Part shown: in pieces, positions 1-11,308 of the stretch
Layout of the letters: each line of letters starts with the position of its first letter
Position numbering within the stretch: position 1 is the stretch's first letter
Virus record (IMG/VR): IMGVR_UViG_3300035070_002626
Span: 186,001 to 250,000 of that record
Reading direction: 5' to 3' (one strand)
Length of the DNA stretch: 64,000 nt
Translations under genes and position numbers: made by a program
The notes under the pieces: model-generated
The model's database searches: none
What the model was told of the DNA's origin: nothing
What the model saw: the letters and a program-made list of their open reading frames with translations, nothing else

Positions 1-2
1 AT

Positions 3-215
3 ATTAAAATTGACTGTGAAGGATATGAGCTATCCATACTACAAGGTGCAGAGCAAACTATTAAACATCATCAACCTGTGATTGTAGTTGAACAAAAACT
101 ACACAAAGATACCGGCATAACCAAAGAAACACAATATGGCAGTGTTGAATTACTAAAAAGTTGGGGCATGATTGAACTGGCCAGAGTGAGAAACGACTGT
201 ATACTAGGCTGGTAA
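3..215 (+). CDS. FkbM-family SAM methyltransferase, C-terminal part (truncated at window edge; absent from ORF track)
   Basis: Manual translation of frame 3: IKIDCEGYELSILQGAEQTIKHHQPVIVVEQ...ILGW*. The KIDxEGxE motif and 'P vivvE' strand are typical of FkbM; stop TAA at 213-215. Confidence 0.8.
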   Translation: MKIDCEGYELSILQGAEQTIKHHQPVIVVEQKLHKDTGITKETQYGSVELLKSWGMIELARVRNDCILGW

Positions 216-1139
216 GTGCGGTTCAAAGTGTCGATATATTTCACCATTTTGACTTTGTGCAATAGTCCAATGTGCTTGACATAAATTATTCAACCACTGT
301 TCTCTGTCCGGCATTTGAGGATTGTTAATATTTCTAGTATTATGATTTGCAACGTCCCAAGTAACTGCACTTTCTTCATTGATAAATGTTGGTACACCTT
401 CCAATACACTCAATACACTGCTCGAGCTGTTGTAAAATACCGCAGCCCTGGCGCCCTTAACATCTTGTTGAAGTGTGCGCTTGGTACTATCAACAATGTC
501 AACGTGTTGTTGTCGGCCGATTAATTCTGCCCATGGTTTGTCCATAGTACCTGGATGTGGGCGTATTTTAATAACAGTGCCAACTTGACTGCGTATAATT
601 TTTAATGTTTTTTGTAGCCAAGCTATTTGGTCAAATCCTTTAGCATTCCAGCCGTTATCACGCTGCAAGCATAATAAAATATGATCACCATAATTTTTCC
701 ACGGCTTTAATTCAAGTCCTAATGTATCACGCACCATATGCCAGTGATTATGATTGCTGTTACTGTTAGCATATTCACCTTCGTTGTAAAACACACTGTC
801 AAGGCTGTAACGCAACCACATGTTTTCGTGCTCATTGTGAAACTTAAAGCAACTTCCATCAATGCTCATAACTCTGCCGCCAATTGCCTTTTGATGATTA
901 ATAATAGCTTCTCTATGATAAATGTGCGGACCACTATAGCTCATACCGACCCACCCAATGATTACTGCTAGTTTTGCACGATGTAATTGCCGATCACGCA
1001 AATTTTCATCAACCAACACACGGGCACCACATTGTCTTGCGCCGTCTGCAAATGCTCGCATGATCTGTACTTTAATATTATGATTGCGAATCTTCGGAAG
1101 ACTGCTCAAGTACACAACAACATCATAATCCCACGTCAT
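204..1139 (-). CDS. Capsule-polysaccharide-synthesis-like (GT-B) glycosyltransferase-domain protein
   Basis: 311 aa; ILLCLQ...IKIRPHP...AAVFYNSSSSVLSVLEGVPTF resembles the KpsS/KpsC-type C-terminal pattern; paralogous to the C-half of 1136..2800. Confidence 0.55.
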   Translation of the reverse strand: MTWDYDVVVYLSSLPKIRNHNIKVQIMRAFADGARQCGARVLVDENLRDRQLHRAKLAVIIGWVGMSYSGPHIYHREAIINHQKAIGGRVMSIDGSCFKFHNEHENMWLRYSLDSVFYNEGEYANSNSNHNHWHMVRDTLGLELKPWKNYGDHILLCLQRDNGWNAKGFDQIAWLQKTLKIIRSQVGTVIKIRPHPGTMDKPWAELIGRQQHVDIVDSTKRTLQQDVKGARAAVFYNSSSSVLSVLEGVPTFINEESAVTWDVANHNTRNINNPQMPDREQWLNNLCQAHWTIAQSQNGEIYRHFEPHLPA

Positions 1140-2800
1140 CTGCTGTAGTTCTCCTGCAAAATATGCCAGGCGGTGCCTTCCTGCATTTCTTTAGGTGTAA
1201 ATTGATTGTATGCTAAATTGCAACAAAGATTTCTAACTTCGGGTATAGACGGCATGTAAGGAGTTGCAATTTTCTTTAAGTCTGTGTTAGCCAATGGCTG
1301 CGCTGCATTTGGTCCCATTGTGAACACAGGCTTTCCAAATATCAATGCTTCTACCGCAGCAATACTGTTGTAAGTTACCAAACAGTGCACATCTTGAGAT
1401 AGTGCCATTTCCATTGTGTCCACATTAACACGAGCATGTCGGCTTTGTTTTTCCCTGACTACAATAGGCCTGTCAGTGTGCTGTTTAATTTCGTTGATTG
1501 TTGTTTCTACCCATTCTGTTAAATCTACACCCCAATAAGACAGTGCTTTTTGACTAGGAGGACACAGCAAGATATTTCTCCCTGGAAGATGTCTGTTAAT
1601 TGTAACACCTGTTTTGAGAAATCTATCATCTTGGCACTGTTGGTATAATGGTGCACTATATTGCAATGCATTTTTAGTAATTCGGTGATATTTTTTATGC
1701 TTGCCGTTGCCAAAATAGCCAGTGTCAATGTAATAAAAATCTCGCTTTTCTTCTAAGCATCTATGTATTACTTTCTTTTTAGCAATACCTCTTACTACAA
1801 CCGGCACTGACAAATCAGTTAATTCTACGTGCTTGCTTGCTCCAAACACTCCGTTGGACCCTAATAAAAAACTCTCTACTATTACATCCAACTTTGATTC
1901 TCCTTTTGGTTGAGTAACGCCAGCATCAACAATGCCCATACAGCCCGGGGTATTATGAGATTGTATTATACGTTCAATGATGTTGTCCATACTGTCTTCG
2001 TTAAATATACCAAAAGGGTCACGGCGTAGTTTTAATAAATCTTTAATATCATTTCTAATGTCTTCGGGCAGTGTTAAATCACTTGCACTAATTGTGGGAT
2101 TGTTTAACGTTTCCAAATATTCGTCATGATAGGCATTCCACACATTAGCATACGCACAATCTTCATAATTTTCAAACCATGGGCCTCCTTCAGTGTAGTG
2201 CAAAAGTTTAGGGCTACCGTCACGAGGTTCTACATACCAGTCAGTTAACCAGTTCCATTCAGGGTTAACTGCGCCAATTTCTCTGTCTTTAAGCCAGCTA
2301 AATCTATGCAAGTATGCACCTGTTATATCTGGGGCGTTAACAACATCAACAGTTATTTTTTTATTGGCCTTGTGTGCGCAATTCCACACAACCATGCTGC
2401 TCCAATTTTTACGTGGATAAACTGTTTGTTGTTGCCCGTCCATCTTTACACCTTCTTTAGGAGTGTAATCATGTTGAACGCAAGTTACTGCTTTTTTAGG
2501 ATCAACTTCCTCAATGAGTTTGGCAATATCGTCCACTAGTATCATATCACTATCCATAAAGATAGCAGTACCTTTATAGTTGTTAAGTACTGGTACTAAA
2601 AAACGAGTGAACGTAAATTCTGTACTTGCAAGTTTATCAACTTCGCGACTATAAAATCCACGCATGCGCAAATCGTCTTGTTTTAGAAAGTGTATGTCCA
2701 CCGGAATAGTTGCATGTTTTAATATGCTGTGGCGGCACACGTCAGCAGCAATAGGTTCGCGACTGTCCCATCCAATGTAAATTGTAAGAATATCTTCCAT
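1136..2800 (-). CDS. Bifunctional glycosyltransferase: N-terminal GT-A (GT8/CDI-like) plus C-terminal capsule-synthesis-like domain
   Basis: IYIGWDSRE...STEFTFTRFLVP...FMDSDM (DxD)...KNWSSMVVWN...HYTEGGPWF; second half REK...HCLVTYNSIAAVEALIFGKPVF. Confidence 0.7.
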   Translation of the reverse strand: MEDILTIYIGWDSREPIAADVCRHSILKHATIPVDIHFLKQDDLRMRGFYSREVDKLASTEFTFTRFLVPVLNNYKGTAIFMDSDMILVDDIAKLIEEVDPKKAVTCVQHDYTPKEGVKMDGQQQTVYPRKNWSSMVVWNCAHKANKKITVDVVNAPDITGAYLHRFSWLKDREIGAVNPEWNWLTDWYVEPRDGSPKLLHYTEGGPWFENYEDCAYANVWNAYHDEYLETLNNPTISASDLTLPEDIRNDIKDLLKLRRDPFGIFNEDSMDNIIERIIQSHNTPGCMGIVDAGVTQPKGESKLDVIVESFLLGSNGVFGASKHVELTDLSVPVVVRGIAKKKVIHRCLEEKRDFYYIDTGYFGNGKHKKYHRITKNALQYSAPLYQQCQDDRFLKTGVTINRHLPGRNILLCPPSQKALSYWGVDLTEWVETTINEIKQHTDRPIVVREKQSRHARVNVDTMEMALSQDVHCLVTYNSIAAVEALIFGKPVFTMGPNAAQPLANTDLKKIATPYMPSIPEVRNLCCNLAYNQFTPKEMQEGTAWHILQENYSR

Positions 2801-3555
2801 TAGTCTCTTCTTTCAATGTCTTCTTCACTGAGTTCGGTACCCATCCAAACTTCAATTACTTTAGCAGTAACATTGCCGACATTAGTTGCTTTGTGCCAAG
2901 TGTGTGCAGGAATATCAATACTTTGTCCCGATGTATATAATATACTTGACTTGTCGCCATTGGCAAACTCTAAATCCATACGGATATCGCCTTCAACTAC
3001 ATGCCAATGTTCACTACGTATAAAATGTCTTTGGTCACTCAGCGGAGTTTCGGTCCCAAATGCAAGTTCCTTTACTGCCCAACCAGGGCCATTATGCAAC
3101 ACTGTGTAACTTCCCCATGCACGGTGCGTTGTAGGTTGACTCCACTCTTTGAGTATCCAACTACTGCTATTCTTTTTATCTTCGCCGCCAACACCAAATG
3201 CAAACTCTACATCCGAATAAATCATTTCTGGAATATTATCTTTAGTTCTGTCACCGCCGTTGGCAAATACAATTTTTGTTTTGTTGCTTGCTGTAGACAG
3301 CAATTGAAAAATTGCACTGCATGCTGTGTCGTCGTTGTCATTGAACCCAATAACTTCATCTACACATGCTAATTCTTTAATAATAGAACAGCGCTCTTCA
3401 AAGGACATAAAAGGGCGACCTTTTTTACGTGCGAGCCATTCATCGCTATTAACTCCTACAACAAGCTTGTCGCCAAGTTCTCTTGCTGCCTTAAAATATG
3501 CTATGTGCCCGCTGTGAAGTGGATCAAACCCCCCTGTAACTAATACTACAATCAT
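2800..3555 (-). CDS. Cytidylyltransferase (TagD/RfaE-II family) fused to cupin (mannose-6-phosphate isomerase type II C-terminal-like)
   Basis: TGGFDPLHSGH (HxGH), GVNSD, KKGRPF, ANGGDR, SSS; C-terminal RAWGSY...QRHFIRSEHWHVVEG...WHKATN cupin motifs. Confidence 0.8.
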   Translation of the reverse strand: MIVVLVTGGFDPLHSGHIAYFKAARELGDKLVVGVNSDEWLARKKGRPFMSFEERCSIIKELACVDEVIGFNDNDDTACSAIFQLLSTASNKTKIVFANGGDRTKDNIPEMIYSDVEFAFGVGGEDKKNSSSWILKEWSQPTTHRAWGSYTVLHNGPGWAVKELAFGTETPLSDQRHFIRSEHWHVVEGDIRMDLEFANGDKSSILYTSGQSIDIPAHTWHKATNVGNVTAKVIEVWMGTELSEEDIERRD

Positions 3556-3609
3556 AGTTGATATCCTTGATTTCTTGTTTTAAATGTGTCTACAGCGTGT
3601 GTTATTAAA

Positions 3610-4428
3610 TTATGCAATCCCATATGTTTCACCTTCGTGTCGCATGCCATTGAACACTGTGGTCTTAAATTTATTATTATCACTGTTTATTGTAGTAAAA
3701 AAATCTAAGTCTAGATCTAATTTTTCTATTAAATTAATTATTGCTCTTGTGTCCTTGGGCAAACACATCCCGCCGTATCCGCGTAGTTCATTGCTTACAT
3801 CAAGATACATATCACCCGCTCTGCCTGTTAGAATATAAGCATCTTTGACTCGTGTATAATCACTGTCTAACTTCTGACAGATTTCATAAAACACGTTAGC
3901 AAATGTAACTCGTGTAGCAGCATACAAATTTAGATAGTATTTGAGTATCTCAGCTTCATTTGGATTTAATTGTACAGTATGCACCGGATAATGCCCGTGT
4001 GCCTTTACAACAGTTTCGTAAACATAATTGTCTTTGGTTCCTACTGCTAGCATTTTATGTTCATTAATAAAGTCGTGTTCTGCACAACGCTCTCTTATAA
4101 ATTCTGGAACAAAACAAATCTGTCTATTTGTATATGTGTCTAGCATACTTTGTGTAAAGCCCGGAACAGTACTACTTCTAATAGCAATTATACCGTTGTA
4201 ATCTATGCTGTCTAACTCTTGTATTACACTCTTGACTATGTCAGTATTGCAGTCACCATTGGGCTTACTAGGTGTAGGCACACAAATAAATGTACACTCT
4301 GTATCTTTTACAATATTAATTGATGTATCAAATTTAGTGTCGTGCACAAATACATTGTGCCCTAGTTGCTCAAAGCCTACTTTGTTTGCTTTGCCTATTA
4401 CACCTAATCCAATAATTCCTAATTTCAT
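3610..4428 (-). CDS. ugd: UDP-glucose/GDP-mannose 6-dehydrogenase family, short form lacking the C-terminal domain
   Basis: GIIGLGVIG Rossmann motif, FICVPTP, RSSTVPG, PEFIRE, EAEILKY..N, GYGGMCLPKD catalytic Cys; only 272 aa. Confidence 0.85.
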   Translation of the reverse strand: MKLGIIGLGVIGKANKVGFEQLGHNVFVHDTKFDTSINIVKDTECTFICVPTPSKPNGDCNTDIVKSVIQELDSIDYNGIIAIRSSTVPGFTQSMLDTYTNRQICFVPEFIRERCAEHDFINEHKMLAVGTKDNYVYETVVKAHGHYPVHTVQLNPNEAEILKYYLNLYAATRVTFANVFYEICQKLDSDYTRVKDAYILTGRAGDMYLDVSNELRGYGGMCLPKDTRAIINLIEKLDLDLDFFTTINSDNNKFKTTVFNGMRHEGETYGIA

Positions 4429-5297
4429 TTTAAGTTTGCCTCAACTGTATATTTTAATCCAGCGTGTAGATCTGTAGTGGGCACCCATCCTGTTAGTCGT
4501 TGCACCTTTGTAATGTCCGGCATACGTCTGCGCACACTACCTTCTGGTGCAGGAAACTTTTTAATAGGCTGATCAACTCCCATATTATCTAGTATAATTT
4601 GTGCTAGGGTGAGCACATCAACTTCTTCGTTACTACCAATGTTAACTATTTCTCCACGTGCTGCATCTGTAAACATCAATGCTACTAGTGCATCACAAAA
4701 GTCCTTAACGTACAACCAGCTGCGTGTGTTGTCGTATCCGTATAGTTCTACGACACCTGTTTTCACTCTATCAATAAATTCATCAACAAAGTGATTAATT
4801 TGGCGAGGACCATATATGTTGTTAGGTCGTACTATAATCCAATCTAGTCCGCTTGCAATACATGCTTGCTCACCGAGTGCTTTTGAATTAGCATAGCTCC
4901 ATCGAATATTTGTAACGTCGGACACCACAATAGGACACGCTTCGTCTGTTGGTATCTTGTAGTTAAAGTAGTCAGTTGCTCCTGCAATACTTTCTGGTGT
5001 GCCAGTGTATACTATTAGCGGGCGCAACCCATCTTTGTTTCTGTAGTAGTCTAATATGTTAAGGGTAGGAATAATGTTGTCATTGATAACTTCAAACCCT
5101 TTGGTGTAAAAATCTTTGGTACTGTTGTATGCAGCAAGGTGTACAACGATATCTACTTCTGGAAATACTTTAGTTGTCTTAAGATCACCGGACTCTTTGT
5201 CCCATGCTATAATTTCACACTCTGGATGCTGTAGTGTTAATGTTTCTATAAGGTGACTTCCTATAAATCCTGATGCACCTGTAATTAATATTTTCAT
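4425..5297 (-). CDS. NAD-dependent epimerase/dehydratase (extended SDR), UDP-glucuronate decarboxylase (ArnA/UXS)-like
   Basis: ILITGASGFIGSHL, HLAA, GTPES, RWSYANSK (YxxxK), RPNNIYGP, TRSWLYVKD, RRMPDITK. Confidence 0.75.
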   Translation of the reverse strand: MKILITGASGFIGSHLIETLTLQHPECEIIAWDKESGDLKTTKVFPEVDIVVHLAAYNSTKDFYTKGFEVINDNIIPTLNILDYYRNKDGLRPLIVYTGTPESIAGATDYFNYKIPTDEACPIVVSDVTNIRWSYANSKALGEQACIASGLDWIIVRPNNIYGPRQINHFVDEFIDRVKTGVVELYGYDNTRSWLYVKDFCDALVALMFTDAARGEIVNIGSNEEVDVLTLAQIILDNMGVDQPIKKFPAPEGSVRRRMPDITKVQRLTGWVPTTDLHAGLKYTVEANLK

Positions 5298-5298
5298 T

Positions 5299-6483
5299 TT
5301 ATTGTCCGTTCATTGATACGTTGTCAAATGCTTTAAGCATTTTGTCTATGCCTTCTTTACAGTCAACAGCATGATTGCCTACCCAGAAACCATTTTTATG
5401 AATGTTTTCAGCAGCATCGTAGTTGCCAGTGGCAGTGTGTGGTAGCATTGATATTACAGGTTGAGCAAGGAAGTTTCCACTGGCAAGTGGTCTCGATTCG
5501 ACGCCTAACAATTCAAACTGTTCAACTAACAGATCACGTTTACCTTCCATGCTTCCATTGAGTACACAACCAAAACTAAACCAACTACTGTTGCCTACTT
5601 CTTTTTGTAAAGTTAAGTAACCTTTATCAGCAAACACACTCATAAAGTAATCTTTGTTTTCAATTCTCTTTTTTAAGATGTCTTCCCATTTTTTAATTTG
5701 AATACTTCCTATTGCGCCGCTCATTTCTAAAGGACGTACACTGTATCCAGGGGTTACAAATGTAAAACTGTCTTTGAAAAAGTTACCTGTCTTTTTAAAG
5801 ATACTACTATTGTCTGGCAATTCTCTACACCAACCGTGTGCTCTTAAACTTCTAAGATAATCTGCATCTTCTTGATTTTGTACGCATATCATTCCGCCTT
5901 CCATTGTTTGTAAATGGTGTGAAAAGAAAAAGCTATGACTGCCCATCATTCCGTGTGTACCGCAATATTTGTCGTTGTATGTTGCGCCCATACTTTCACA
6001 GTTGTCTTCTATTAGAACTAAATCATGCTTTTTGCAAATTAAAGTTATTGCATCATAGTCGCATGAATTGCCGCAAAGGTTAACAGGCATAATTGCAACA
6101 GTGCCTCCGTCTATTGCTTGTTCTATTTTGGTTACATCAATATTAAATGTGTTAGGATCAACGTCTACAAAATTTAAAATAAAATCATTTTGTGTTACAG
6201 GAAAATATGTTGTGCTCCATCCCACTGCGGGAACAATAACATTTGCATTAGGTTTTTTATTTAAGTTGTATTTCCATTTTAACAATGATAACATCAATAA
6301 GTTTGCTGTAGAACCGCTGTTTACCATAACAGCATCAGTTGCTCCAAACTTAGTCGCAAATTCTTTTTCAAACGCAAATACCTTGGGACCCATTGTAAAA
6401 CGTCCCGAGTCCATTACTTCTTGTATTGCAATTAGTTCGTCGGTGCCCCATGTGGACGAAGCCAGTGGATACGTTGCCTGCAT
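5299..6483 (-). CDS. colD: DegT/DnrJ-family PLP enzyme, ColD-like GDP-4-keto-6-deoxymannose 3-dehydratase
   Basis: MVNSGSTAN, IEDNCES, SFFFSHHLQTMEGG: His at the position of the Schiff-base Lys, as in ColD; RAHGW, GYSVRPLEM. Confidence 0.7.
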   Translation of the reverse strand: MQATYPLASSTWGTDELIAIQEVMDSGRFTMGPKVFAFEKEFATKFGATDAVMVNSGSTANLLMLSLLKWKYNLNKKPNANVIVPAVGWSTTYFPVTQNDFILNFVDVDPNTFNIDVTKIEQAIDGGTVAIMPVNLCGNSCDYDAITLICKKHDLVLIEDNCESMGATYNDKYCGTHGMMGSHSFFFSHHLQTMEGGMICVQNQEDADYLRSLRAHGWCRELPDNSSIFKKTGNFFKDSFTFVTPGYSVRPLEMSGAIGSIQIKKWEDILKKRIENKDYFMSVFADKGYLTLQKEVGNSSWFSFGCVLNGSMEGKRDLLVEQFELLGVESRPLASGNFLAQPVISMLPHTATGNYDAAENIHKNGFWVGNHAVDCKEGIDKMLKAFDNVSMNGQ

Positions 6484-6510
6484 AGTGAACTCCTGTATTA
6501 CAGTAGTACT

Positions 6511-6516
6511 TATTTA
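6511..6516 (-). promoter_or_regulatory. Late-promoter core TAAATA upstream of the ColD-like/SDR/Ugd genes
   Basis: GTAAATA followed by an AGGAG Shine-Dalgarno before ATG 6483. Confidence 0.5.
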
Positions 6517-6564
6517 CAGCCACTTGGCGTTAGTAAATAAATCAAAGTCTGAAAGTTGCGTTAC

Positions 6565-6912
6565 TCAATACCCGTTATTTCTTTTTACATTCCACGCAAT
6601 TGCTGTTAACAATCCCTCGGGCTTGTCATCGTTAACGACAATACGTTCTCCCATTGGCAAGTTAAACAGTATATGATCATATCGTATTCCGCTTTCCTTG
6701 AGAAAAAGTAGAGTTGCTTCTTTCCACGGATCGCTTCGAGCAGTTGTAATTACAATAACATCATCTCTAGGAATAGTGTCCCACAGTTCAACAACACCGG
6801 GCAGCAATGTATCTTGCCCATCGTCAAACAGCCCGTTGTGTTTAAATATAGTCCCATCTAAGTCAAAGAACCATGTGTGTTTTAAATTGTTACTGAGTTC
6901 AAATGGTATCAT
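6565..6912 (-). CDS. Small capless HAD-superfamily phosphatase
   Basis: FFDLDGT motif I, ITTAR motif II, terminal VNDD motif IV; 115 aa. Confidence 0.75.
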   Translation of the reverse strand: MIPFELSNNLKHTWFFDLDGTIFKHNGLFDDGQDTLLPGVVELWDTIPRDDVIVITTARSDPWKEATLLFLKESGIRYDHILFNLPMGERIVVNDDKPEGLLTAIAWNVKRNNGY

Positions 6913-8435
6913 TGTATTTTTGTTAATCCTTTGTTTAACCAGTAGAGCCCATAATAGAAACTACCAATTACACTGTCAATATCGTCTTTGGCATACCCAC
7001 TAAGTGCTAGCCAAATTAACCCGTGCAGCAATTCAATTTTTGCCACACAATCAGGTAGCAGTTCTTCGAACACACCTTCTGCAACGCCAGCAGTAGGTGC
7101 TGCAGGCATGATGATTTCACAGGTATCTTTGTCAATGTGTAGTTTAAACTTGCGCCGATTAAAGTTATCATATCCCCCAACAGCACTATAGTACACTTTA
7201 GCAAAATCATATATTGGATCGCCGAAAATACCAGGTTTATCAAAATACCCCCTGGGATCAATAAACCAAGCTTTGAGATTATTATCAATAATTGTATTGG
7301 AAAAAGTTGGATCGCCATGTATAGGAGTAAACCATGTTGTTTGTAATGCATTATTGATTTGATTCCACAAGTGCGAATGTGTACTATGAAATATATTAAT
7401 GCATTTTACACCATTGACTGTAAAACTTGCTTTATCAAATCCAGGTATGATCTTACTAACACTGTTTACTCTATTTTGTGTTTTTTCAATGTAAACACGT
7501 TTTATTTGATCATTGTTAGCAGGCTGTTGCCCTTTGCTGTGCAGGTCTTGCAGTGTGTAAATAATGTCTGCCAGCATACTGCGCTGTTCTCTTACAGTAA
7601 GATCCTGCAATTCCCACACATGTTGGCCTTTAACTCTGGACATTGTAAGATGTTGCGAGTCTACTCCCACGCTTGGTATTCTTTTAAAATCCAAATCATT
7701 GATTGCACTGTACCACGCATGCTCTTGTGTTATCAAGTGTGCATAGTCAGAATCGATTGCTTGTTTTACAACAACATCGTCTTGCACATCAACATTATTA
7801 AAGAATCTACAAAATCCTAGTTTGCTGTTGTTTGCTTCTATTGCCCCAAAGTCACCAAGTTCTTCGAGCTGGTGTTCTGTAACTGTATCAAAGTCACTAA
7901 CATTATTACTAAACCACTTAACAAACTCACCGCTAAGTGGTGGTTTTGGAAAATGCTCTTGCGTAGGGAAATAAAATATACCCGGCACACCGTTTGTTTC
8001 ACTGGGTGACTCTACAAGCCCATCTGGTTGCATACTCCAACGACAAGTAAATGCATCAGTTAAGCACACAATAGGACGATCGGCGTTATCCGGAAAAGGT
8101 GCAATATGATTGATGATCAAATCACTCCAAGTTAACAACACTGGTTCATCTTTGGGCACTGCATCTAGTGCTTGAGCAATGCCGGCACAGGTACCTGTTT
8201 CATTTGCACGAATTAATTTGTATTCAACATCAGGGCTATCAACTTGTAAATAGTTTTCTAATTGTTCATACAAGTAATCACCGATAATAATAAAACGTGC
8301 ATTTGGAAATTTGTCAAACAAATGATACAGTAAAGGCTTTCCGTGCACACTAACCAAGCACTTGGGTTTGTTCCATGTGTGATGACGCAGTCTACTTCCT
8401 CGTCCCCCTGCTTGTACTATTATATTCAACGTCAT
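6909..8435 (-). CDS. Nucleotidyltransferase fused to an APH/choline-kinase-like phosphotransferase domain
   Basis: N-terminal QAGGRGSRL...KPKCLV...WSD; C-terminal HGDPTFSN, FIDPRG, DPIYDFAK. Confidence 0.7.
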   Translation of the reverse strand: MTLNIIVQAGGRGSRLRHHTWNKPKCLVSVHGKPLLYHLFDKFPNARFIIIGDYLYEQLENYLQVDSPDVEYKLIRANETGTCAGIAQALDAVPKDEPVLLTWSDLIINHIAPFPDNADRPIVCLTDAFTCRWSMQPDGLVESPSETNGVPGIFYFPTQEHFPKPPLSGEFVKWFSNNVSDFDTVTEHQLEELGDFGAIEANNSKLGFCRFFNNVDVQDDVVVKQAIDSDYAHLITQEHAWYSAINDLDFKRIPSVGVDSQHLTMSRVKGQHVWELQDLTVREQRSMLADIIYTLQDLHSKGQQPANNDQIKRVYIEKTQNRVNSVSKIIPGFDKASFTVNGVKCINIFHSTHSHLWNQINNALQTTWFTPIHGDPTFSNTIIDNNLKAWFIDPRGYFDKPGIFGDPIYDFAKVYYSAVGGYDNFNRRKFKLHIDKDTCEIIMPAAPTAGVAEGVFEELLPDCVAKIELLHGLIWLALSGYAKDDIDSVIGSFYYGLYWLNKGLTKIQ

Positions 8436-9163
8436 ATGCTAACAATTCTTTCAGGTAACGGAATATCCCAAAGTTTGCCTTTGTTCCAGTAGTAAACTCC
8501 GTTGACCATGTCTGGGTAATTGTTGTACACATGTTGAAAACTCATGCCACTAAACACAAAACTTTCCAGCTTCCACAGTTTTCTTTCTCGCATGCAATGG
8601 AATGCAGCATCGATGTTGCGTGGAAACATAAAGTCACGCATTTCGTTGCCTGGAATTTGCGTTAGTTCTGTCCAGTCTAGAGAACTGCGAAACAATGCTA
8701 CACCAAAAGTCCAGCCTGCATTGTGTGTACTGTAAAAGTCTAAACTAAATCCATCCAACTTGTGCTCTACTAGATAGTTTTCGGCACTGTGAATTTTATC
8801 ATTGAGTGCATCCCACCTGTGCGTTAAAAACTGTGTATCGTCAGCGTCAATCATCCAGAAGTTGTCACTGTTGTCTTTGCTTAATTCAAACCCTGTCAGG
8901 TTAGCAGTTGCCATGTTGCGCTTACGGGGTTTGAGTTCTTTAAGATAACTTACTAAACTTCTATCACTAGCAACAAATTTTGTTTGCGGATAATCAATAA
9001 AACAAGTGTCTAATATTTTAGGACGACTTCCATCTTCTTCGGTTCTATCACACAATATCCAAGTTGGGTAGTCTTTAAATGTTTCTAGCCAGAAACGTAA
9101 ACAATGCACAGCATGCATGTCCATTCTGTCAATTTTTAAAAACACATTAGTTTTCATAATCAA
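8432..9163 (-). CDS. Hypothetical protein, possible GT-A glycosyltransferase
   Basis: 243 aa; FWMIDADD DxD-like motif; located in the sugar cluster. Confidence 0.4.
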   Translation of the reverse strand: MIMKTNVFLKIDRMDMHAVHCLRFWLETFKDYPTWILCDRTEEDGSRPKILDTCFIDYPQTKFVASDRSLVSYLKELKPRKRNMATANLTGFELSKDNSDNFWMIDADDTQFLTHRWDALNDKIHSAENYLVEHKLDGFSLDFYSTHNAGWTFGVALFRSSLDWTELTQIPGNEMRDFMFPRNIDAAFHCMRERKLWKLESFVFSGMSFQHVYNNYPDMVNGVYYWNKGKLWDIPLPERIVSI

Positions 9164-9170
9164 TAGTCTT

Positions 9171-9434
9171 TCATTTGTTTTCTTTTACCAAAGTATACAC
9201 TACAATTAACTGGTCAAGAATTTCTTTAATTGCAACATTTGTTAAACTTAGTTTACATATGTCTTGAAAGTCACTGTCACTTATGAATTGACCATTGGCT
9301 CTAGCAATTGCATCCGTATCTCCGCCAATGATCCAACGAGGTATAGTATTGTGCGGCGGATCTCTGTACCTAGCATATGTTATACCAGTAGCATGCTCGT
9401 ATATCAACGGCTCACCTGGAAGAAGATCACCCAC
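9171..9434 (-). CDS. Hypothetical phage protein
   Basis: 87-aa ORF in operon orientation, tightly packed with its neighbours. Confidence 0.55.
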   Translation of the reverse strand: MGDLLPGEPLIYEHATGITYARYRDPPHNTIPRWIIGGDTDAIARANGQFISDSDFQDICKLSLTNVAIKEILDQLIVVYTLVKENK

Positions 9435-9435
9435 G

Positions 9436-9684
9436 TTACTTGTCCATTAACTCTGCTTTGCGCTTTTCAATAGCTGCAAGTCGCTGTGCCTCAGCTTCAA
9501 TATCAGCAGACTCTCTTTCTGCCTTTGCTGTACCATCCCGGCCCATAAACAATAAAACGATTGCTGTGATAAGGGGTGAAATCAATAGTGCAATAAAAAA
9601 CCAAAGCCATCCATTGCGTCCCCAGTTGTTGGCCCAGTAACCTACTAAAGCCGAAAACCCTACTGCGATTAAAATAATATCCAA
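9436..9684 (-). CDS. Small membrane protein (2-3 hydrophobic helices, charged C-terminal tail)
   Basis: IILIAVGFSALVGYW...WLWFFIALLISPLITAIVLLFM followed by an acidic/basic helix. Confidence 0.65.
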   Translation of the reverse strand: MDIILIAVGFSALVGYWANNWGRNGWLWFFIALLISPLITAIVLLFMGRDGTAKAERESADIEAEAQRLAAIEKRKAELMDK

Positions 9685-9685
9685 C

Positions 9686-10048
9686 TTATATGTTTCCTTT
9701 TACTTCAGTGCCACTTGTACGTCTTACAATATCGTCGTGATTAAACTCTGCCCAGTATAGTTCAAATGCTACACCGTCTTCAAGTCCTTCGAACTGATGG
9801 ATCTTGCCTGGCTTGACTTGTGTAAAGTCGCCTGCGTTTAGAATAGTTTCATCAACTAGTCCTTGGTCATCTTGCCACACACGCACAAGCATCTGTCCTG
9901 ACTCTACATAGAAGCCGTTCCATTTAAATTGATGCTCGTGTTCACTGCATTTGTAACCTTTATTAAATTCAATGCGATGGAACTCTAATGCTCCGTTTGC
10001 ATGAATCAACTCTGTGTTACCCCAAATTTTTCCTGCTTTAATTCCCAT
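9686..10048 (-). CDS. Cupin-domain protein (possible sugar isomerase/epimerase)
   Basis: SEHEHQFKWNGFYVESG and KIHQF cupin His motifs. Start reassigned to MGIKAG at 10048, a TAATG overlap with the upstream stop. Confidence 0.7.
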   Translation of the reverse strand: MGIKAGKIWGNTELIHANGALEFHRIEFNKGYKCSEHEHQFKWNGFYVESGQMLVRVWQDDQGLVDETILNAGDFTQVKPGKIHQFEGLEDGVAFELYWAEFNHDDIVRRTSGTEVKGNI

Positions 10049-10806
10049 TACTGTTGTTCCATCCACATGTTGTTCTTGTCTAACCAAGGTAATATTAAAT
10101 CTCGTTGTCGCAGATATCCGTACTTAGATATGCTAGCTTCGGCACTTGCTGGCAACAAATCTGTATCACCAGCAAGTTTGTACAAATTAGTAGTTTTAGG
10201 ATCCATTGGTTCAATATTGCTGCGATATACTAGTGCATACATCCATGGATCATTTATGTCTTTTTTGAAAAACCCACTGCGACAGTCCCACCCACTAACT
10301 GCTAGCATGTATATCAACTGTGGCATAGTATAATGATACTTTTGCTCTAAATGAACATTATACTCAAGTATATTGAATTTTACATTGGTTGTTTGCGGGA
10401 CTGCTACAATTAACATAGCATCTTGTTCAGCAACATGCCACCAATTAGACAATGCTTCGTATGGGTTTATTAAATTTTGCAGTTGATCGTGGCATAGCAA
10501 TATATCAAACGTTTTTTTATTACTATTGAATTTTTCAATATCGTCTACACGCTGGTATGAAATGTTGTCGTGACGAGACAACAACTTATCGTGTGTATTA
10601 ATACCAACACACTTGATGTTCAACGGTTGTTGATTGTCACGGGTAACTTGGTTTGCCCACCAAGTCATAGTGTGTCCGTCAACATCGCAGCCAATGTCAA
10701 GAACTCTATTTACACTTTCCATGAAATCATCATACTCTATCATGTAAGACAGAATATTTTCAAATATATGATTGTGTTTTAACTCAATACTACTAAACGA
10801 GCTCAT
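10048..10806 (-). CDS. Class I SAM-dependent methyltransferase-like protein
   Basis: RVLDIGCD motif I, FDILLCHDQLQ, LIVAVP. Confidence 0.6.
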   Translation of the reverse strand: MSSFSSIELKHNHIFENILSYMIEYDDFMESVNRVLDIGCDVDGHTMTWWANQVTRDNQQPLNIKCVGINTHDKLLSRHDNISYQRVDDIEKFNSNKKTFDILLCHDQLQNLINPYEALSNWWHVAEQDAMLIVAVPQTTNVKFNILEYNVHLEQKYHYTMPQLIYMLAVSGWDCRSGFFKKDINDPWMYALVYRSNIEPMDPKTTNLYKLAGDTDLLPASAEASISKYGYLRQRDLILPWLDKNNMWMEQQ

Positions 10807-10855
10807 TTTCTAATCCTTGTACATATACTATATGTATCTTAACAATCAAGCAGGA

Positions 10856-11308
10856 TTAAATTTCAATGTCTTCCATCCCGGCAGTGCGAAGTCTTACAAT
10901 GTGCCCCATTTGCCATTGCTTGGTATCTAAGCCCTTCATGATTCCTAGATACCTATTGCGCATTAGCGCAACTTCATTGATCAACGTTTCGAAGTCGATT
11001 ACTTCATCTTCGCCGTCAACATATTTTTCAGCATCTCTACTGCTCAATGCACGGCCGTAGTTTTCTAGATATTTTTGAAAATGCTTGCGCCGAATCTTGC
11101 GTAGTTGTATGTTAAGAAAGTTGAGCACCGCTTCAATTTCTTGAAGCTGGTTAAAGCGATGCTCAGTAATGCCCGGTAGGGCACTAATATTCTTTTCGAC
11201 TATACCACTAACTTGGCATTCACGTTTTGCGGCAAGTATTTCTTGCTCAAAATGTGTAATAAACCCTGGAATATTTGCAAGATTTTGAGTAACACGACTA
11301 TACCACAT
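10856..11308 (-). CDS. uvsY: UvsY-like recombination mediator
   Basis: 150-aa helical protein with KYLE, EKYVDGEDEV and GIMKGLDTKQWQ; syntenic with UvsX. Confidence 0.65.
   Translation of the reverse strand: MWYSRVTQNLANIPGFITHFEQEILAAKRECQVSGIVEKNISALPGITEHRFNQLQEIEAVLNFLNIQLRKIRRKHFQKYLENYGRALSSRDAEKYVDGEDEVIDFETLINEVALMRNRYLGIMKGLDTKQWQMGHIVRLRTAGMEDIEI

What the first reader, a model, noticed from the sequence alone, without database searches (positions are those of the whole stretch)
3610..6483. Ugd + ArnA/UXS-like SDR + ColD-type (His-for-Lys) dehydratase: possible novel deoxy-sugar pathway
Seen: three adjacent co-oriented genes; the PLP enzyme has FSHHLQTMEGG and the SDR has T-x-E and RWSYxxxK. 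Established: Ugd-ArnA-ArnB makes UDP-L-Ara4N using a Lys-containing aminotransferase, whereas ColD removes the 3-OH of GDP-4-keto-6-deoxymannose and normally partners with Gmd and ColC, neither of which I see in this window. Inference: either colitose synthesis completed by genes elsewhere, or a hybrid route in which a UDP-4-keto-pentose is 3-deoxygenated to an unusual nucleotide sugar for virion or host-surface glycosylation.
Basis: partly seen in the sequence, partly recalled or inferred. Interest (0 to 1): 0.62.

Follow-up and report, generated by a model that had tools for sequence, protein, structure and literature searches.

The report
Phage ColD–SDR–mini-dehydrogenase sugar module
A jumbo phage carries a conserved three-gene set (a ColD-type 3-dehydratase, an unusual short-chain dehydrogenase and a shortened UDP-glucose-dehydrogenase-like enzyme) that most likely makes an undescribed 3-deoxy nucleotide sugar without the usual colitose partner enzymes.

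Summary
Three minus-strand genes are tightly packed: a 1-nt gap, then an ATGA overlap. They lie in a ~300 kb jumbo myovirus record.

- **P0001 (6483..5299)** is a ColD-type dehydratase with Ser-His in place of the aminotransferase Asn-Lys. It matches E. coli ColD at E 1e-109.
- **P0002 (5297..4425)** is a divergent extended SDR with invariant T-x-E and RWSYxxxK.
- **P0003 (4428..3610)** is not a normal Ugd. It belongs to a large family of ~265-aa "mini-UGDH" proteins that keep every catalytic residue and lack the C-terminal nucleotide-sugar-binding domain.

No Gmd, ColC/Fcl or UGDH C-domain is found anywhere in the 300 kb record.

Across IMG/VR phage contigs the SDR sits directly upstream of the mini-DH in 74 of 78 loci, so that pair is the core. 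A ColD joins it in one lineage only, seen here in eight independent contexts, one with permuted gene order. That ColD lineage is nested inside Gmd/ColC-associated (GDP-type) bacterial ColDs.

Best reading (about 0.45): C6 oxidation, then C4 oxidation with decarboxylation, then PMP-dependent C3 deoxygenation, giving an NDP-3-deoxy-4-keto-pentose. The nucleotide is probably GDP rather than UDP.

The main rival is a colitose-like route fed by the host's Gmd. No enzyme activity was tested.

The parts
5299..6483 (-). P0001, ColD-type PMP/PLP-dependent NDP-4-keto-sugar 3-dehydratase (394 aa)
   Evidence: Pfam DegT_DnrJ_EryC1 4.8e-71. phmmer to E. coli O55 ColD/WbdK 2gms: E 1.4e-109 over residues 4-382. 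E1/RfbH 3bcx: only 5e-46. Nested in the ColD tree.
5893..5925 (-). FSHHLQTMEGG motif. S188-H189 aligns with ColD Ser187-His188, the catalytic His that replaces the aminotransferase Lys.
   Evidence: In the alignments to the ColD mutant chains 3b8x (H188N) and 2r0t (H188K), the mutated residue faces H189. S188, H189 and H190 are invariant in alignment A1.
4425..5297 (-). P0002, divergent extended SDR (290 aa); proposed C4-oxidase/decarboxylase and possibly C4-reductase
   Evidence: Pfam Epimerase 3.4e-32. Best PDB match is human UXS1 4lk3 at 5.5e-21. Every NCBIfam hit is far below its cut-off. The family alignment is A3.
4992..5000 (-). T100-P101-E102 (T-x-E) of the SDR
   Evidence: T100 and E102 are invariant in 16 family members of 45-78% identity. 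T and E are also kept in 47 of 47 ColD-minus relatives, as T-C-E or T-P-E.
4881..4904 (-). R132-W-S-Y135-A-N-S-K139 (catalytic YxxxK) of the SDR
   Evidence: R132, W133, Y135 and K139 are invariant.
3610..4428 (-). P0003, 'mini-UGDH': a two-domain nucleotide-sugar-6-dehydrogenase-like protein (272 aa) without the C-terminal nucleotide-sugar-binding domain
   Evidence: Only the Pfam UDPG_MGDP_dh_N and central domains are found. It aligns to residues 93-305 of the 444-residue UGDH 3vtf. The AF2 model has pLDDT 94.4; Foldseek against UGDHs gives TMq 0.84 and TMt 0.54. The family is ~250-290 aa throughout.
3751..3774 (-). GGMCLPKD, the catalytic Cys222/Lys225/Asp226 motif of the mini-UGDH
   Evidence: C222, K225 and D226 are invariant in 29 sequences of 27-72% identity, as are E109, K163 and N167.
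2800..3555 (-). P0004, a fusion of a cytidylyl/adenylyl-transferase-like domain with a type-II PMI cupin; a frequent neighbour of the SDR-DH pair
   Evidence: Pfam CTP_transf_like 1.4e-16 and MannoseP_isomer 7.1e-21. NCBIfam rfaE_dom_II 1.2e-20 and GMP_PMI 6.4e-18. Full-length homologues of 50-69% identity lie just downstream of SDR-DH in about 35 of 80 IMG/VR loci.
1136..2800 (-). P0005, a weak GT8-like N-terminal half joined to a C-terminal half paralogous to P0006
   Evidence: Pfam GT8 at 0.0014, below the cut-off. BLASTP of the C-terminal half to P0006: 28% identity over 137 aa, E 3e-7.
204..1139 (-). P0006, a protein resembling the KpsC/WbbB/KrkA-type retaining beta-Kdo transferases
   Evidence: No Pfam hit. 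The AF2 model has pLDDT 87. The 15 best Foldseek PDB matches are all Kdo transferases, E 1e-7 to 3e-5, TM about 0.5. Homologues accompany SDR-DH-P0004 in many phage loci and the sister ColD clade in L015.
6565..6912 (-). P0008, a minimal HAD-like phosphatase (115 aa)
   Evidence: Weak Pfam Acid_phosphat_B hit at 6.6e-4, below the cut-off. A DLDGT motif is visible in the translation.
6909..8435 (-). P0007, a fusion of a nucleotidyltransferase with an APH-fold kinase (508 aa); a possible sugar-1-kinase/pyrophosphorylase
   Evidence: Pfam NTP_transf_3 4.3e-10, NTP_transferase 3.1e-6 and APH 1.6e-5. PDB matches are only weak: RfbF, LicC and HddC-like.
9686..10087 (-). 133-aa cupin, orthologue of the cupin that accompanies SDR-DH in ColD-less phages
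   Evidence: Pfam Cupin_2 1e-7. It is 64% identical to the 116-aa cupin of L008. That cupin was detected in about 30 of 80 IMG/VR loci.

Best explanation
The three genes form one self-contained nucleotide-sugar module.

1. The mini-UGDH (P0003) oxidises C6 of an NDP-hexose to the uronic acid by the usual Cys-thioester chemistry. The substrate is most likely a manno-configured GDP-sugar such as GDP-mannose.
2. The SDR (P0002) oxidises C4. The resulting beta-keto acid loses CO2, giving an NDP-4-keto-pentose, as in ArnA and UXS.
3. The ColD-type enzyme (P0001) forms a PMP ketimine at C4 and expels the 3-OH through His189. This gives an NDP-3-deoxy-4-keto-pentose. PMP is regenerated from glutamate.
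4. The keto group is then probably reduced by the NADH left on the SDR (a UXS-like second half-reaction). That would yield an NDP-3-deoxypentose, in effect a colitose-like sugar without C6, which neighbouring glycosyltransferases would use.

Shown here: the family identities, the conserved catalytic residues, the absence of Gmd and ColC, the conserved linkage, and the descent of the ColD from GDP-type ColDs.

Inferred: every catalytic step, the order of steps, the nucleotide, the final reduction and the fate of the sugar.
For: - P0001 is a true ColD relative: 2gms at E 1.4e-109, with the Ser-His catalytic pair.
- The mini-UGDH keeps the whole UGDH catalytic set. E109, K163, N167, C222, K225 and D226 are invariant down to 27% identity. 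It also has the UGDH fold. So it most likely performs a primary-alcohol-to-acid oxidation, which is incompatible with a 6-deoxy sugar in the same pathway.
- The SDR lies directly upstream of the mini-DH, with a gap of 0-75 nt, in 74 of 78 IMG/VR loci. In the window the two genes overlap by ATGA.
- The ColD-SDR-DH triple is found in L012, L014, L017/L018, L102/L103, a JGI 64.5 kb contig, L114, L119 and L171. In L104 the order is permuted to DH-ColD-SDR.
- ColD-plus rows form one clade in both the SDR and the DH trees.
- The SDR diverged much more than the DH when ColD joined. SDR identity between ColD-plus and ColD-minus rows is 42%, against 67% within ColD-plus; for the DH the figures are 61% and 68%. 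There are 30 switch positions in the SDR and 7 in the DH. This is as expected if the SDR exchanges intermediates with ColD.
- The SDR keeps T-x-E and YxxxK, the signature of C4-oxidising decarboxylases and dehydratases, not of 4-epimerases. Its best solved relative is UXS1.
- No Gmd, Fcl/ColC or other reductase is conserved with the triple, and none is in the 300 kb record.
- For GDP and manno configuration: the module ColD is nested (99*) in Gmd-associated ColDs. It retains 84 of 102 columns that are at least 90% conserved in canonical ColDs. A GT11 follows the triple in one cluster. The cassette's usual neighbour, P0004, carries a ManC/AlgA-type PMI cupin, which parallels AlgA plus AlgD making GDP-mannuronate.
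Against: - No activity was tested.
- The SDR is only remotely like UXS/ArnA. Similar E-values go to RmlB-type 4,6-dehydratases, LegB and the GDP-4-keto-6-deoxymannose reductase Rmd. The carboxylate-binding Ser of the ArnA/UXS T-S-E motif is Pro here.
- The mini-UGDH has no nucleotide-binding domain, so how, or whether, it binds an NDP-sugar is unknown.
- The sister ColD sub-clade in phages (L015/L016) also lacks Gmd and has no mini-DH. So phage ColDs can evidently rely on host-made GDP-4-keto-6-deoxymannose.
- P0004's nucleotidyltransferase domain belongs to a superfamily known for ATP or CTP use, not GTP.
- Neighbouring transferases look like CMP-Kdo users or GT8, not GDP-sugar users.
- The complex prediction for P0002 with P0003 gave no answer.
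Confidence: 0.45

Rival explanations
1. A colitose-like 3,6-dideoxyhexose route fed by the host. The host's Gmd supplies GDP-4-keto-6-deoxy-D-mannose. P0001 does the canonical ColD reaction. P0002 is the C4 reductase (Rmd- or ColC-like), giving a GDP-3,6-dideoxyhexose. The mini-UGDH serves another sugar of the same glycan, for instance by making a uronic acid.
For: P0001 is 40-56% identical to ColDs flanked by Gmd and/or Fcl, and keeps most of their conserved columns. P0002 aligns over its full length to GDP-6-deoxy-D-mannose reductases: 6x3b at 2.5e-13 and 2pk3 at 9e-8. Its C-terminal domain is 35% identical to the SDR that accompanies the DH-less sister ColD clade. Those sister phages also lack Gmd.
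Against: It does not explain why the mini-DH is present with the module ColD in every one of eight contexts, even after the gene order was permuted. It does not explain why SDR and DH are an almost obligate overlapping pair without ColD in most phages. P0002 lacks the S-x-C...H epimerase/reductase signature of Fcl/ColC, and scores 44.8 bits against a 500-bit cut-off. The host is unknown, so its Gmd cannot be checked.
Confidence: 0.25
2. P0002 is itself the 4,6-dehydratase, replacing Gmd, and acts on an NDP-hexose or NDP-heptose. ColD then removes the 3-OH. The mini-DH oxidises a remaining primary alcohol, such as C7 of a 6-deoxy-heptose, or works on another substrate.
For: The best NCBIfam hits of P0002 are 4,6-dehydratases: LegB at 2.8e-27 and RmlB at 5.6e-26. 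T-x-E with YxxxK is also the dehydratase signature. The island holds an RfaE-II-like nucleotidyltransferase, a kinase-nucleotidyltransferase fusion with weak HddC similarity, a HAD phosphatase and an aldose-ketose-isomerase-type cupin. That is the enzyme set of an NDP-heptose route.
Against: All those hits are far below the family cut-offs. No separate 4-reductase is conserved with the triple. On a hexose, C6 oxidation and 4,6-dehydration exclude each other. The heptose-type genes are not conserved with the triple in the other contexts.
Confidence: 0.12
3. The cassette works on a substrate that is not an NDP-sugar, for example a CMP-linked or free ulosonic or other acidic sugar related to the phage's Kdo pathway. 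The loss of the nucleotide-sugar-binding domain in the mini-DH would reflect that.
For: The mini-DH lacks the UDP-binding domain throughout a family with about 9,800 hits. The cassette's regular neighbours are a cytidylyltransferase-like fusion and proteins resembling Kdo transferases. The phage encodes KdsA-like and KdsB-like genes.
Against: The ColD enzyme is a close relative of GDP-sugar enzymes and keeps most of their conserved positions. The SDR is a typical extended, NDP-sugar type SDR. No chemistry linking Kdo to a 4-keto/3-OH elimination is evident.
Confidence: 0.1

Closest known systems
Colitose pathway: ManC-Gmd-ColD-ColC (E. coli O55, Yersinia, Vibrio)
   Same: P0001 is a close homologue of ColD, with the Ser-His catalytic pair and no E1-type Fe-S motif. 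The expected chemistry is the same: PMP-dependent loss of the 3-OH from an NDP-4-keto sugar, with PMP regenerated from glutamate.
   Different: No Gmd and no ColC are present. The partners are a mini-UGDH and a T-P-E SDR instead. So the 4-keto substrate is probably a pentose from decarboxylation, not 4-keto-6-deoxymannose. The module ColD clade carries its own substitutions (L137C, F183H, F367W) and five clade-specific cysteines.
Ugd-ArnA(decarboxylase domain)-ArnB route to UDP-L-Ara4N, and Ugd-UXS to UDP-xylose
   Same: The logic is the same: a 6-dehydrogenase, then a C4-oxidising decarboxylating SDR, then a DegT-family PLP/PMP enzyme acting on the 4-keto-pentose. The SDR has T-x-E, YxxxK and the Arg of the R-x-P-D/S-I segment.
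   Different: The DegT enzyme is a His-type dehydratase, not a Lys-type aminotransferase. The dehydrogenase lacks its nucleotide-binding domain. The SDR is only remotely related to ArnA/UXS and has Pro where they have the carboxylate-binding Ser. The nucleotide is probably not UDP.
AlgA-AlgD (GDP-mannose to GDP-mannuronate)
   Same: A PMI-cupin/nucleotidyltransferase fusion (P0004) sits next to a UGDH-family dehydrogenase. The ColD ancestry suggests manno-configured, GDP-linked chemistry.
   Different: P0004's transferase domain is of the HIGH-motif cytidylyl/adenylyl-transferase fold, not the ManC fold. The dehydrogenase is truncated. An SDR always accompanies it.
E1/E3 (RfbH/AscC-AscD) CDP-3,6-dideoxyhexose route
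   Same: Both are DegT-family His-type 3-dehydrases.
   Different: P0001 is far closer to ColD than to E1 (E 1e-109 against 5e-46). It has only one of the clustered cysteines of E1's C-x-C-x7-C segment.

Membership tests
ColD (GDP-4-keto-6-deoxy-D-mannose 3-dehydratase) | DegT/aspartate-aminotransferase fold with close sequence kinship to characterised ColD | tested here: met
   PF01041 at 4.8e-71. 2gms/3b8x/2r0t/3gr9 at E about 1e-109 over residues 4-382. Placed inside the ColD tree.
ColD (GDP-4-keto-6-deoxy-D-mannose 3-dehydratase) | Catalytic His in place of the Schiff-base Lys, preceded by Ser (Ser187-His188) | tested here: met
   S188-H189 face the residues mutated in 3b8x (H188N), 2r0t (H188K) and 3gr9 (S187N/H188K). 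Both are invariant in alignment A1.
ColD (GDP-4-keto-6-deoxy-D-mannose 3-dehydratase) | Works with Gmd upstream and ColC downstream (gene association) | tested here: not met
   No Gmd or Fcl/ColC in the 300 kb record, and none beside the triple in the other contexts. Of 80 bacterial relatives, 45 do have Gmd and/or Fcl nearby.
ColD (GDP-4-keto-6-deoxy-D-mannose 3-dehydratase) | Substrate is GDP-4-keto-6-deoxy-D-mannose (GDP and C6-methyl contacts) | not testable with these tools
   The ColD structure papers are not held and no ligand coordinates are available. Indirect evidence only: 84 of 102 conserved columns are kept and 7 are switched.
UDP-glucose/GDP-mannose 6-dehydrogenase (UGDH family) | N-terminal NAD-binding Rossmann domain and central helical domain | tested here: met
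   PF03721 at 2.1e-13 and PF00984 at 8.4e-18. The AF2 model superposes on UGDHs with TMq 0.84. The N-domain is shortened by about 40 residues.
UDP-glucose/GDP-mannose 6-dehydrogenase (UGDH family) | Catalytic Cys nucleophile with the Lys/Asn/Asp/Glu set | tested here: met
   E109, K163, N167, C222, K225 and D226 are invariant in 29 sequences. They align to the PEFxRE, K..N and GGxCxPKD motifs of solved UGDHs.
UDP-glucose/GDP-mannose 6-dehydrogenase (UGDH family) | C-terminal nucleotide-sugar-binding domain (PF03720) | tested here: not met
   Absent from P0003 and from the whole genome, where the best hit scores 12.7 bits. Absent across the family, whose members are 250-290 aa. TMt is only 0.54.
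UXS/ArnA-type NDP-hexuronate C4-oxidase/decarboxylase | Extended SDR with GxxGxxG, T-x-E and YxxxK | tested here: met
   PF01370. T100, E102, Y135 and K139 are invariant.
UXS/ArnA-type NDP-hexuronate C4-oxidase/decarboxylase | Carboxylate contacts: the Ser of T-S-E and the Arg of the R-x-P-D/S-I segment (ArnA S433 and R619; residue roles recalled from memory) | tested here: inconclusive
   The Arg is kept: R258 in RRMPDI aligns with KRKPDI of UXS1 and is invariant. The Ser is Pro, or Cys in ColD-less relatives. The Arg also occurs in dehydratases.
UXS/ArnA-type NDP-hexuronate C4-oxidase/decarboxylase | Significant full-length similarity to characterised members | tested here: inconclusive
   UXS1 is the best PDB hit, but only at 5.5e-21. 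RmlB, epimerases and Rmd are close behind. The ArnA models score far below cut-off: PRK11908 at 45.9 bits against 294, and the ArnA equivalog at 38.7 against 777.
Gmd / NDP-hexose 4,6-dehydratase | Reaches the family model cut-off | tested here: not met
   P0002 reached no E <= 0.01 against the gmd model TIGR01472. RmlB TIGR01181 scores 91 bits against 365, and LegB 96 against 475.
ColC / GDP-L-fucose synthase | Family model cut-off and the S-x-C...H epimerase-reductase residues (recalled from memory) | tested here: not met
   NF047922 scores 53 bits or 44.8 bits against a 500-bit cut-off, and covers only the C-terminal half. The motif is T-P-E, not S-x-C.
Arn pathway (Ugd-ArnA-ArnB) | Lys-type DegT aminotransferase acting on the 4-keto-pentose | tested here: not met
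   P0001 has His at the Lys position. The ArnB model scores 139 bits against a 631-bit cut-off.
E1 (CDP-6-deoxy-4-hexulose 3-dehydrase) | [2Fe-2S] cysteine motif after the catalytic His | tested here: not met
   In the alignment to 3bcx, only C219 faces one Cys of E1's ..DCYCAPGCDNTC.. segment. RfbH scores 232 bits against a 423-bit cut-off.

The most novel reading that the evidence does not exclude
The mini-UGDH/SDR pair is a widespread viral generator of NDP-4-keto-pentose. It works without the canonical nucleotide-binding domain. In the ColD-bearing lineage the SDR acts as a 'bracket' enzyme: it oxidises and decarboxylates the uronate, hands the 4-keto-pentose to a recruited ColD, and then re-reduces the 3-deoxy product with its own NADH. 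The outcome would be an NDP-3-deoxypentose (colitose without C6), which I found described nowhere in the held papers, made by three enzymes with no net redox cofactor.
Probability: 0.3. Interest if true: 0.75.

Novelty: new variant of a known kind. Interest (0 to 1): 0.6.

Why it matters
If the reading is right, aquatic phages and some bacteria make a deoxy-pentose nucleotide sugar by combining two textbook routes: Ugd with ArnA/UXS, and ColD.

Two further points stand whatever the pathway turns out to be.
- A very large family of UGDH-like enzymes has dispensed with the domain thought necessary to hold the nucleotide sugar. There are about 9,800 hits at E <= 0.001 in a library clustered at 50% identity, and relatives on 333 IMG/VR contigs.
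- The family is almost unrepresented in cultured phages. The best tblastn hit in 50,697 phage records is 29.5% identical.

Together these give enzymologists a compact three-protein system to reconstitute. They also give phage biologists a marker for an unstudied glycan-building island, which here includes a KdsA-like fragment, a KdsB-like gene, proteins resembling Kdo transferases, methyl- and carbamoyl-transferases.

Tried and rejected
- **Complex prediction.** Complex prediction on P0002 with P0003, testing whether the SDR supplies the missing nucleotide-binding function: no answer, ipSAE 0.00. This is neither for nor against.
- **Promoters and terminators.** The scan of 1-11000 gave counts at or below shuffled expectation.
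- **Searches that found little.** Megablast of 3000-7000 against phages found no match. The search for related loci with P0001 alone found only a 100%-identical twin contig. Alignment A2 was too diverse to seed a scan, so A4 was used instead.
- **ColD structure papers.** They were wanted for the GDP and C6 contacts, but are not held. The seven clade-specific switches therefore could not be mapped to the active site.
- **ESM Atlas look-up of P0002.** Only generic epimerase/dehydratase clusters came back.
- **Rosetta-stone idea.** The DH-SDR fusion P0375 comes from a giant-virus-like contig. Its SDR half is only 21% identical to P0002 and has S-S-S rather than T-x-E, so it is weak support only.
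- **E1-type Fe-S cluster in P0001.** Rejected.
- **Membership in Ugd-ArnA-ArnB, canonical Gmd-ColD-ColC, or a 4-epimerase role for the SDR.** Rejected (see the membership table). The invariant Glu of T-x-E argues against an epimerase.
- **Genome behind L014.** It could not be searched for Gmd because it is not held.
- **Literature.** Searches found no description of the module or of a GDP-mannuronate decarboxylase.
- **Not used.** The reads tools were not used. No alternative genetic code was used.

Full report
**Observation.** The window is positions 186001-250000 of a 299,910-bp linear IMG/VR virus record estimated 86% complete. It is a jumbo myovirus. The window holds a terminase, tail sheath and major head protein. 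The terminase is 51.6% identical to that of the Pseudomonas PA5oct group. GC content is about 0.40, and nearly all genes lie on the minus strand.

The finding's three genes are real:
- P0001, 6483..5299, 394 aa
- P0002, 5297..4425, 290 aa
- P0003, 4428..3610, 272 aa

The quoted motifs are present: FSHHLQTMEGG at P0001 187-197, T-P-E at P0002 100-102, and RWSYANSK at P0002 132-139. The genes are packed as TAA-a-ATG and then an ATGA overlap, with a Shine-Dalgarno-like ACAGGAG before the first.

**The three proteins.**

*P0001* is a DegT-family enzyme (PF01041, 4.8e-71). Its closest solved relative is E. coli O55 ColD/WbdK, at E 1.4e-109 over residues 4-382. The Fe-S enzyme E1 reaches only 5e-46. 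S188-H189 face the residues mutated in the ColD H188N, H188K and S187N/H188K structures, so the His-for-Lys reading is correct. Only one cysteine of E1's cluster segment is matched.

*P0002* is an extended SDR (PF01370, 3.4e-32). It reaches no curated family cut-off. Its best PDB match is human UXS1 at 5.5e-21. An archaeal epimerase/dehydratase, RmlB, UDP-apiose/xylose synthase, a UDP-GlcA epimerase and the GDP-6-deoxymannose reductase Rmd follow closely. In its family, T100, E102, R132, W133, Y135, K139 and R257/R258 are invariant.

*P0003* has only the N-terminal and central UGDH domains. It aligns to residues 93-305 of a 444-residue UGDH. Its AF2 model (pLDDT 94.4) covers 84% of itself but only 54% of UGDH structures. 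No PF03720 domain exists anywhere in the record.

This is not a truncation accident:
- More than 1,000 clusters of 264-283 aa proteins are 62-97% identical to P0003.
- An exhaustive profile-free search of a library clustered at 50% identity gives 9,810 hits. The best 150 representatives (28-56% identity) are almost all 250-290 aa.
- Across 29 members down to 27% identity, the UGDH catalytic set is invariant: E109, K163, N167, C222, K225 and D226.

**What is missing.** The whole record has no Gmd (best hit 31 bits, cut-off 415) and no Fcl/ColC (59 bits, cut-off 500). Its only other SDRs are a GalE at C1:49102-50067 and an RmlB-like protein at C1:10379-11428, next to a GFO/MocA oxidoreductase and a normal DegT aminotransferase.

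**Comparative genomics.** Among 80 IMG/VR loci encoding a P0003 relative (333 contigs matched), the P0002-family SDR lies directly upstream, with a gap of 0-75 nt, in 74 of the 78 loci with room. So SDR plus mini-DH is the core couple.

Typical neighbours are of two kinds:
- a full-length homologue of P0004 (cytidylyl/adenylyl-transferase-like domain plus PMI-type cupin, 50-69% identity) and one to three P0006 homologues, in about 35 loci;
- a 116-aa cupin, in about 30 loci.

The window contains both. P0004, P0005 and P0006 follow the DH in the same order as elsewhere. A 133-aa cupin at 9686..10087 is 64% identical to the 116-aa one.

A ColD-like gene of at least 55% identity joins the couple in only 4 of those 80 loci. 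Five further contexts come from other sources:
- a marine 99 kb phage contig, L012;
- a single-cell-genome contig beside four GT2 genes, L014;
- L017/L018;
- L102/L103;
- a bacterial-looking polysaccharide cluster with a GT11, an ABC transporter and Polysacc_synt_2.

A T4-like cyanophage-type contig, L104, has the order permuted to DH-ColD-SDR.

ColD-plus rows form one clade in both the SDR and DH trees. SDR identity between ColD-plus and ColD-minus rows is 42%, against 67% within ColD-plus. For the DH the figures are 61% and 68%. There are 30 switch positions in the SDR and 7 in the DH.

No record among 50,697 phage records carries close relatives. The best hits are 33% identical for P0001 and 29.5% for P0003.

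**Origin of the ColD.** A scan of one genome per prokaryotic species returned 80 relatives of 39-56% identity. Of these, 45 have a Gmd and/or an Fcl/ColC homologue within 6 kb, and none has the SDR-DH couple.

In an IQ-TREE tree of 104 rows, rooted on the cyanophage S-CAM7 dehydrase, P0001 sits in a 24-row clade (99*) without Gmd or Fcl. The sister group (99*) is made of Gmd-associated ColDs of a Nitrospirales, a Verrucomicrobiales and a Pelagibacteraceae genome. A Pelagibacteraceae ColD-Gmd clade comes next. The module ColD is therefore a derived branch of GDP-type ColDs.

It retains 84 of the 102 columns that are at least 90% conserved in canonical ColDs. Seven columns are switched: E81N, S88G, L101F, L137C, F183H, I333L and F367W. 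The clade has also gained five conserved cysteines: C137, C200, C219, C306 and C375.

A 7-row sister sub-clade (Tara phage contigs L015/L016) has other partners. These are two DxD proteins, an SDR of 311 aa without T-x-E, and a P0006 homologue. It too has no Gmd.

**Mechanistic inference.** Three facts constrain the pathway.
- A UGDH-type Cys enzyme oxidises a primary alcohol, so it cannot act on a 6-deoxy sugar.
- An SDR with T-x-E and YxxxK that is obligately coupled to such an enzyme most simply oxidises C4 of the uronate. The beta-keto acid then decarboxylates, as established for ArnA and UXS.
- ColD chemistry needs exactly a 4-keto sugar with a 3-OH.

The linear order DH, then SDR, then ColD uses all three enzymes and needs no Gmd. 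Because a pentose has no C5 stereocentre, it also needs no ColC-type epimerase. Only a C4 reduction remains, and a UXS-like SDR holding NADH could do it.

The ColD ancestry, the GT11 neighbour and the AlgA-like PMI-cupin neighbour all point to a GDP-linked, manno-configured substrate. This would parallel AlgA/AlgD making GDP-mannuronate.

All catalytic steps are inferences. I give this reading 0.45.

**Rivals.**
- Host Gmd feeds ColD and P0002 is the reductase (0.25). P0002's similarity to Rmd and the Gmd-less sister clade support this. The invariable presence of the mini-DH weakens it.
- P0002 is a 4,6-dehydratase, possibly on a heptose (0.12).
- The substrate is not an NDP-sugar and is related to the phage's Kdo genes (0.10).

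**Surroundings.** The island runs from about genome position 183137 to window position 10806. It holds:
- a weak GT8-like protein and FkbM-type and other methyltransferases;
- P0006 and the C-terminal half of P0005, which resemble KpsC/WbbB/KrkA retaining beta-Kdo transferases;
- P0004;
- a minimal HAD-like protein;
- a nucleotidyltransferase-kinase fusion.

The left end of the record encodes a KdsA-like fragment, a KdsB-like CMP-sugar synthetase, a carbamoyltransferase and an FkbM methyltransferase. The phage thus appears to build a complex glycan. Its target, virion or host surface, is unknown.

**Novelty.** The parts belong to known families. Three things appear undescribed in the literature I could search: the combination, the domain-less dehydrogenase family, and the predicted product. 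I rate the finding a new variant of a known kind.

**Procedural notes.** No reads tools were used. No alternative genetic code was used.

Noticed in passing
proteins P0257, P0262, P0269, P0306 (relatives of window 3610-4428): Several mini-UGDH relatives of 528-644 aa carry an intein (Hint plus LAGLIDADG homing endonuclease). It starts at about residues 222-238 in the three that start at the N-terminus (P0257, P0262, P0269), where the match to the central UGDH domain breaks off and the GGxC catalytic-Cys motif is expected. The exact junction was not checked in an alignment.
   Followed up: partly
genome C1:7-3294 (locus L005 / L193 / L194), outside the window: The left contig end encodes a KdsA-like fragment (cut by the contig end), a KdsB-like CTP_transf_3 cytidylyltransferase, a NodU/CmcH-type carbamoyltransferase and an FkbM methyltransferase. 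So the phage seems to make CMP-Kdo and to decorate sugars.
   Followed up: partly
window 204-1139 and 1136-2017: P0006 and the C-terminal half of P0005 have no Pfam hit. The model of P0006 resembles the retaining beta-Kdo transferases KpsC, KrkA and WbbB. Homologues sit next to the SDR-DH cassette in many phage contigs and next to the sister ColD clade.
   Followed up: partly
window 6909-8435 and 6565-6912: An unusual fusion of a nucleotidyltransferase with an APH-fold kinase is followed by a 115-aa minimal HAD-like protein. Together with P0004 they supply four activities in all (isomerase, kinase, phosphatase, nucleotidyltransferase), the steps of an NDP-heptose or NDP-mannose supply route. 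This idea was not tested.
   Followed up: no
P0001 residues 137, 200, 219, 306, 375 (window 5359-6075): Five cysteines are conserved in 15-16 of 17 module-clade ColDs. They are almost absent from 45 canonical ColDs, which have L/L/T/L/L at these positions. L012 has an IscA/HesB-like gene directly upstream of its ColD. They do not match E1's Fe-S motif, and their meaning is unknown.
   Followed up: partly
L017:9187-10056 and L017:10056-10421: In a 92%-identical SDR, the catalytic G-T-P-E is replaced locally by P-N-I-K. This could be a compensated frameshift or an assembly error. A 121-aa ORF without Pfam hits is inserted between the SDR and the DH.
   Followed up: no
L101:7001-8767 (protein P0375): A mini-UGDH fused to a different SDR (S-S-S type). 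The contig has ubiquitin-conjugating enzyme, DnaJ, Cu/Zn-SOD and dCMP deaminase genes, which suggests a giant eukaryotic virus. Other relatives are fused to GT1 (P0292) or GT2 (P0354).
   Followed up: partly
genome C1:8431-12141 and C1:48519-50067, outside the window: There are two more sugar loci. The first has a GFO/MocA UDP-GlcNAc-3-dehydrogenase-like gene, a Lys-type DegT aminotransferase and an RmlB-like SDR, beside ThyX. The second has a 215-aa DegT fragment and a GalE, beside GTP cyclohydrolase I.
   Followed up: no
genome C1:273839-287359 and C1:294054-299586, outside the window: A single ORF of about 4,506 aa, and two radical-SAM proteins near the right contig end.
   Followed up: no
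L013 / L113 (IMGVR_UViG_3300034407_002547, 106 kb): A second IMG/VR contig carries P0001, P0002 and P0003 at 100% protein identity. It also has matches to P0004, P0006 and P0007, whose identity was not printed. It is probably the same phage or a near twin from another assembly.
   Followed up: partly
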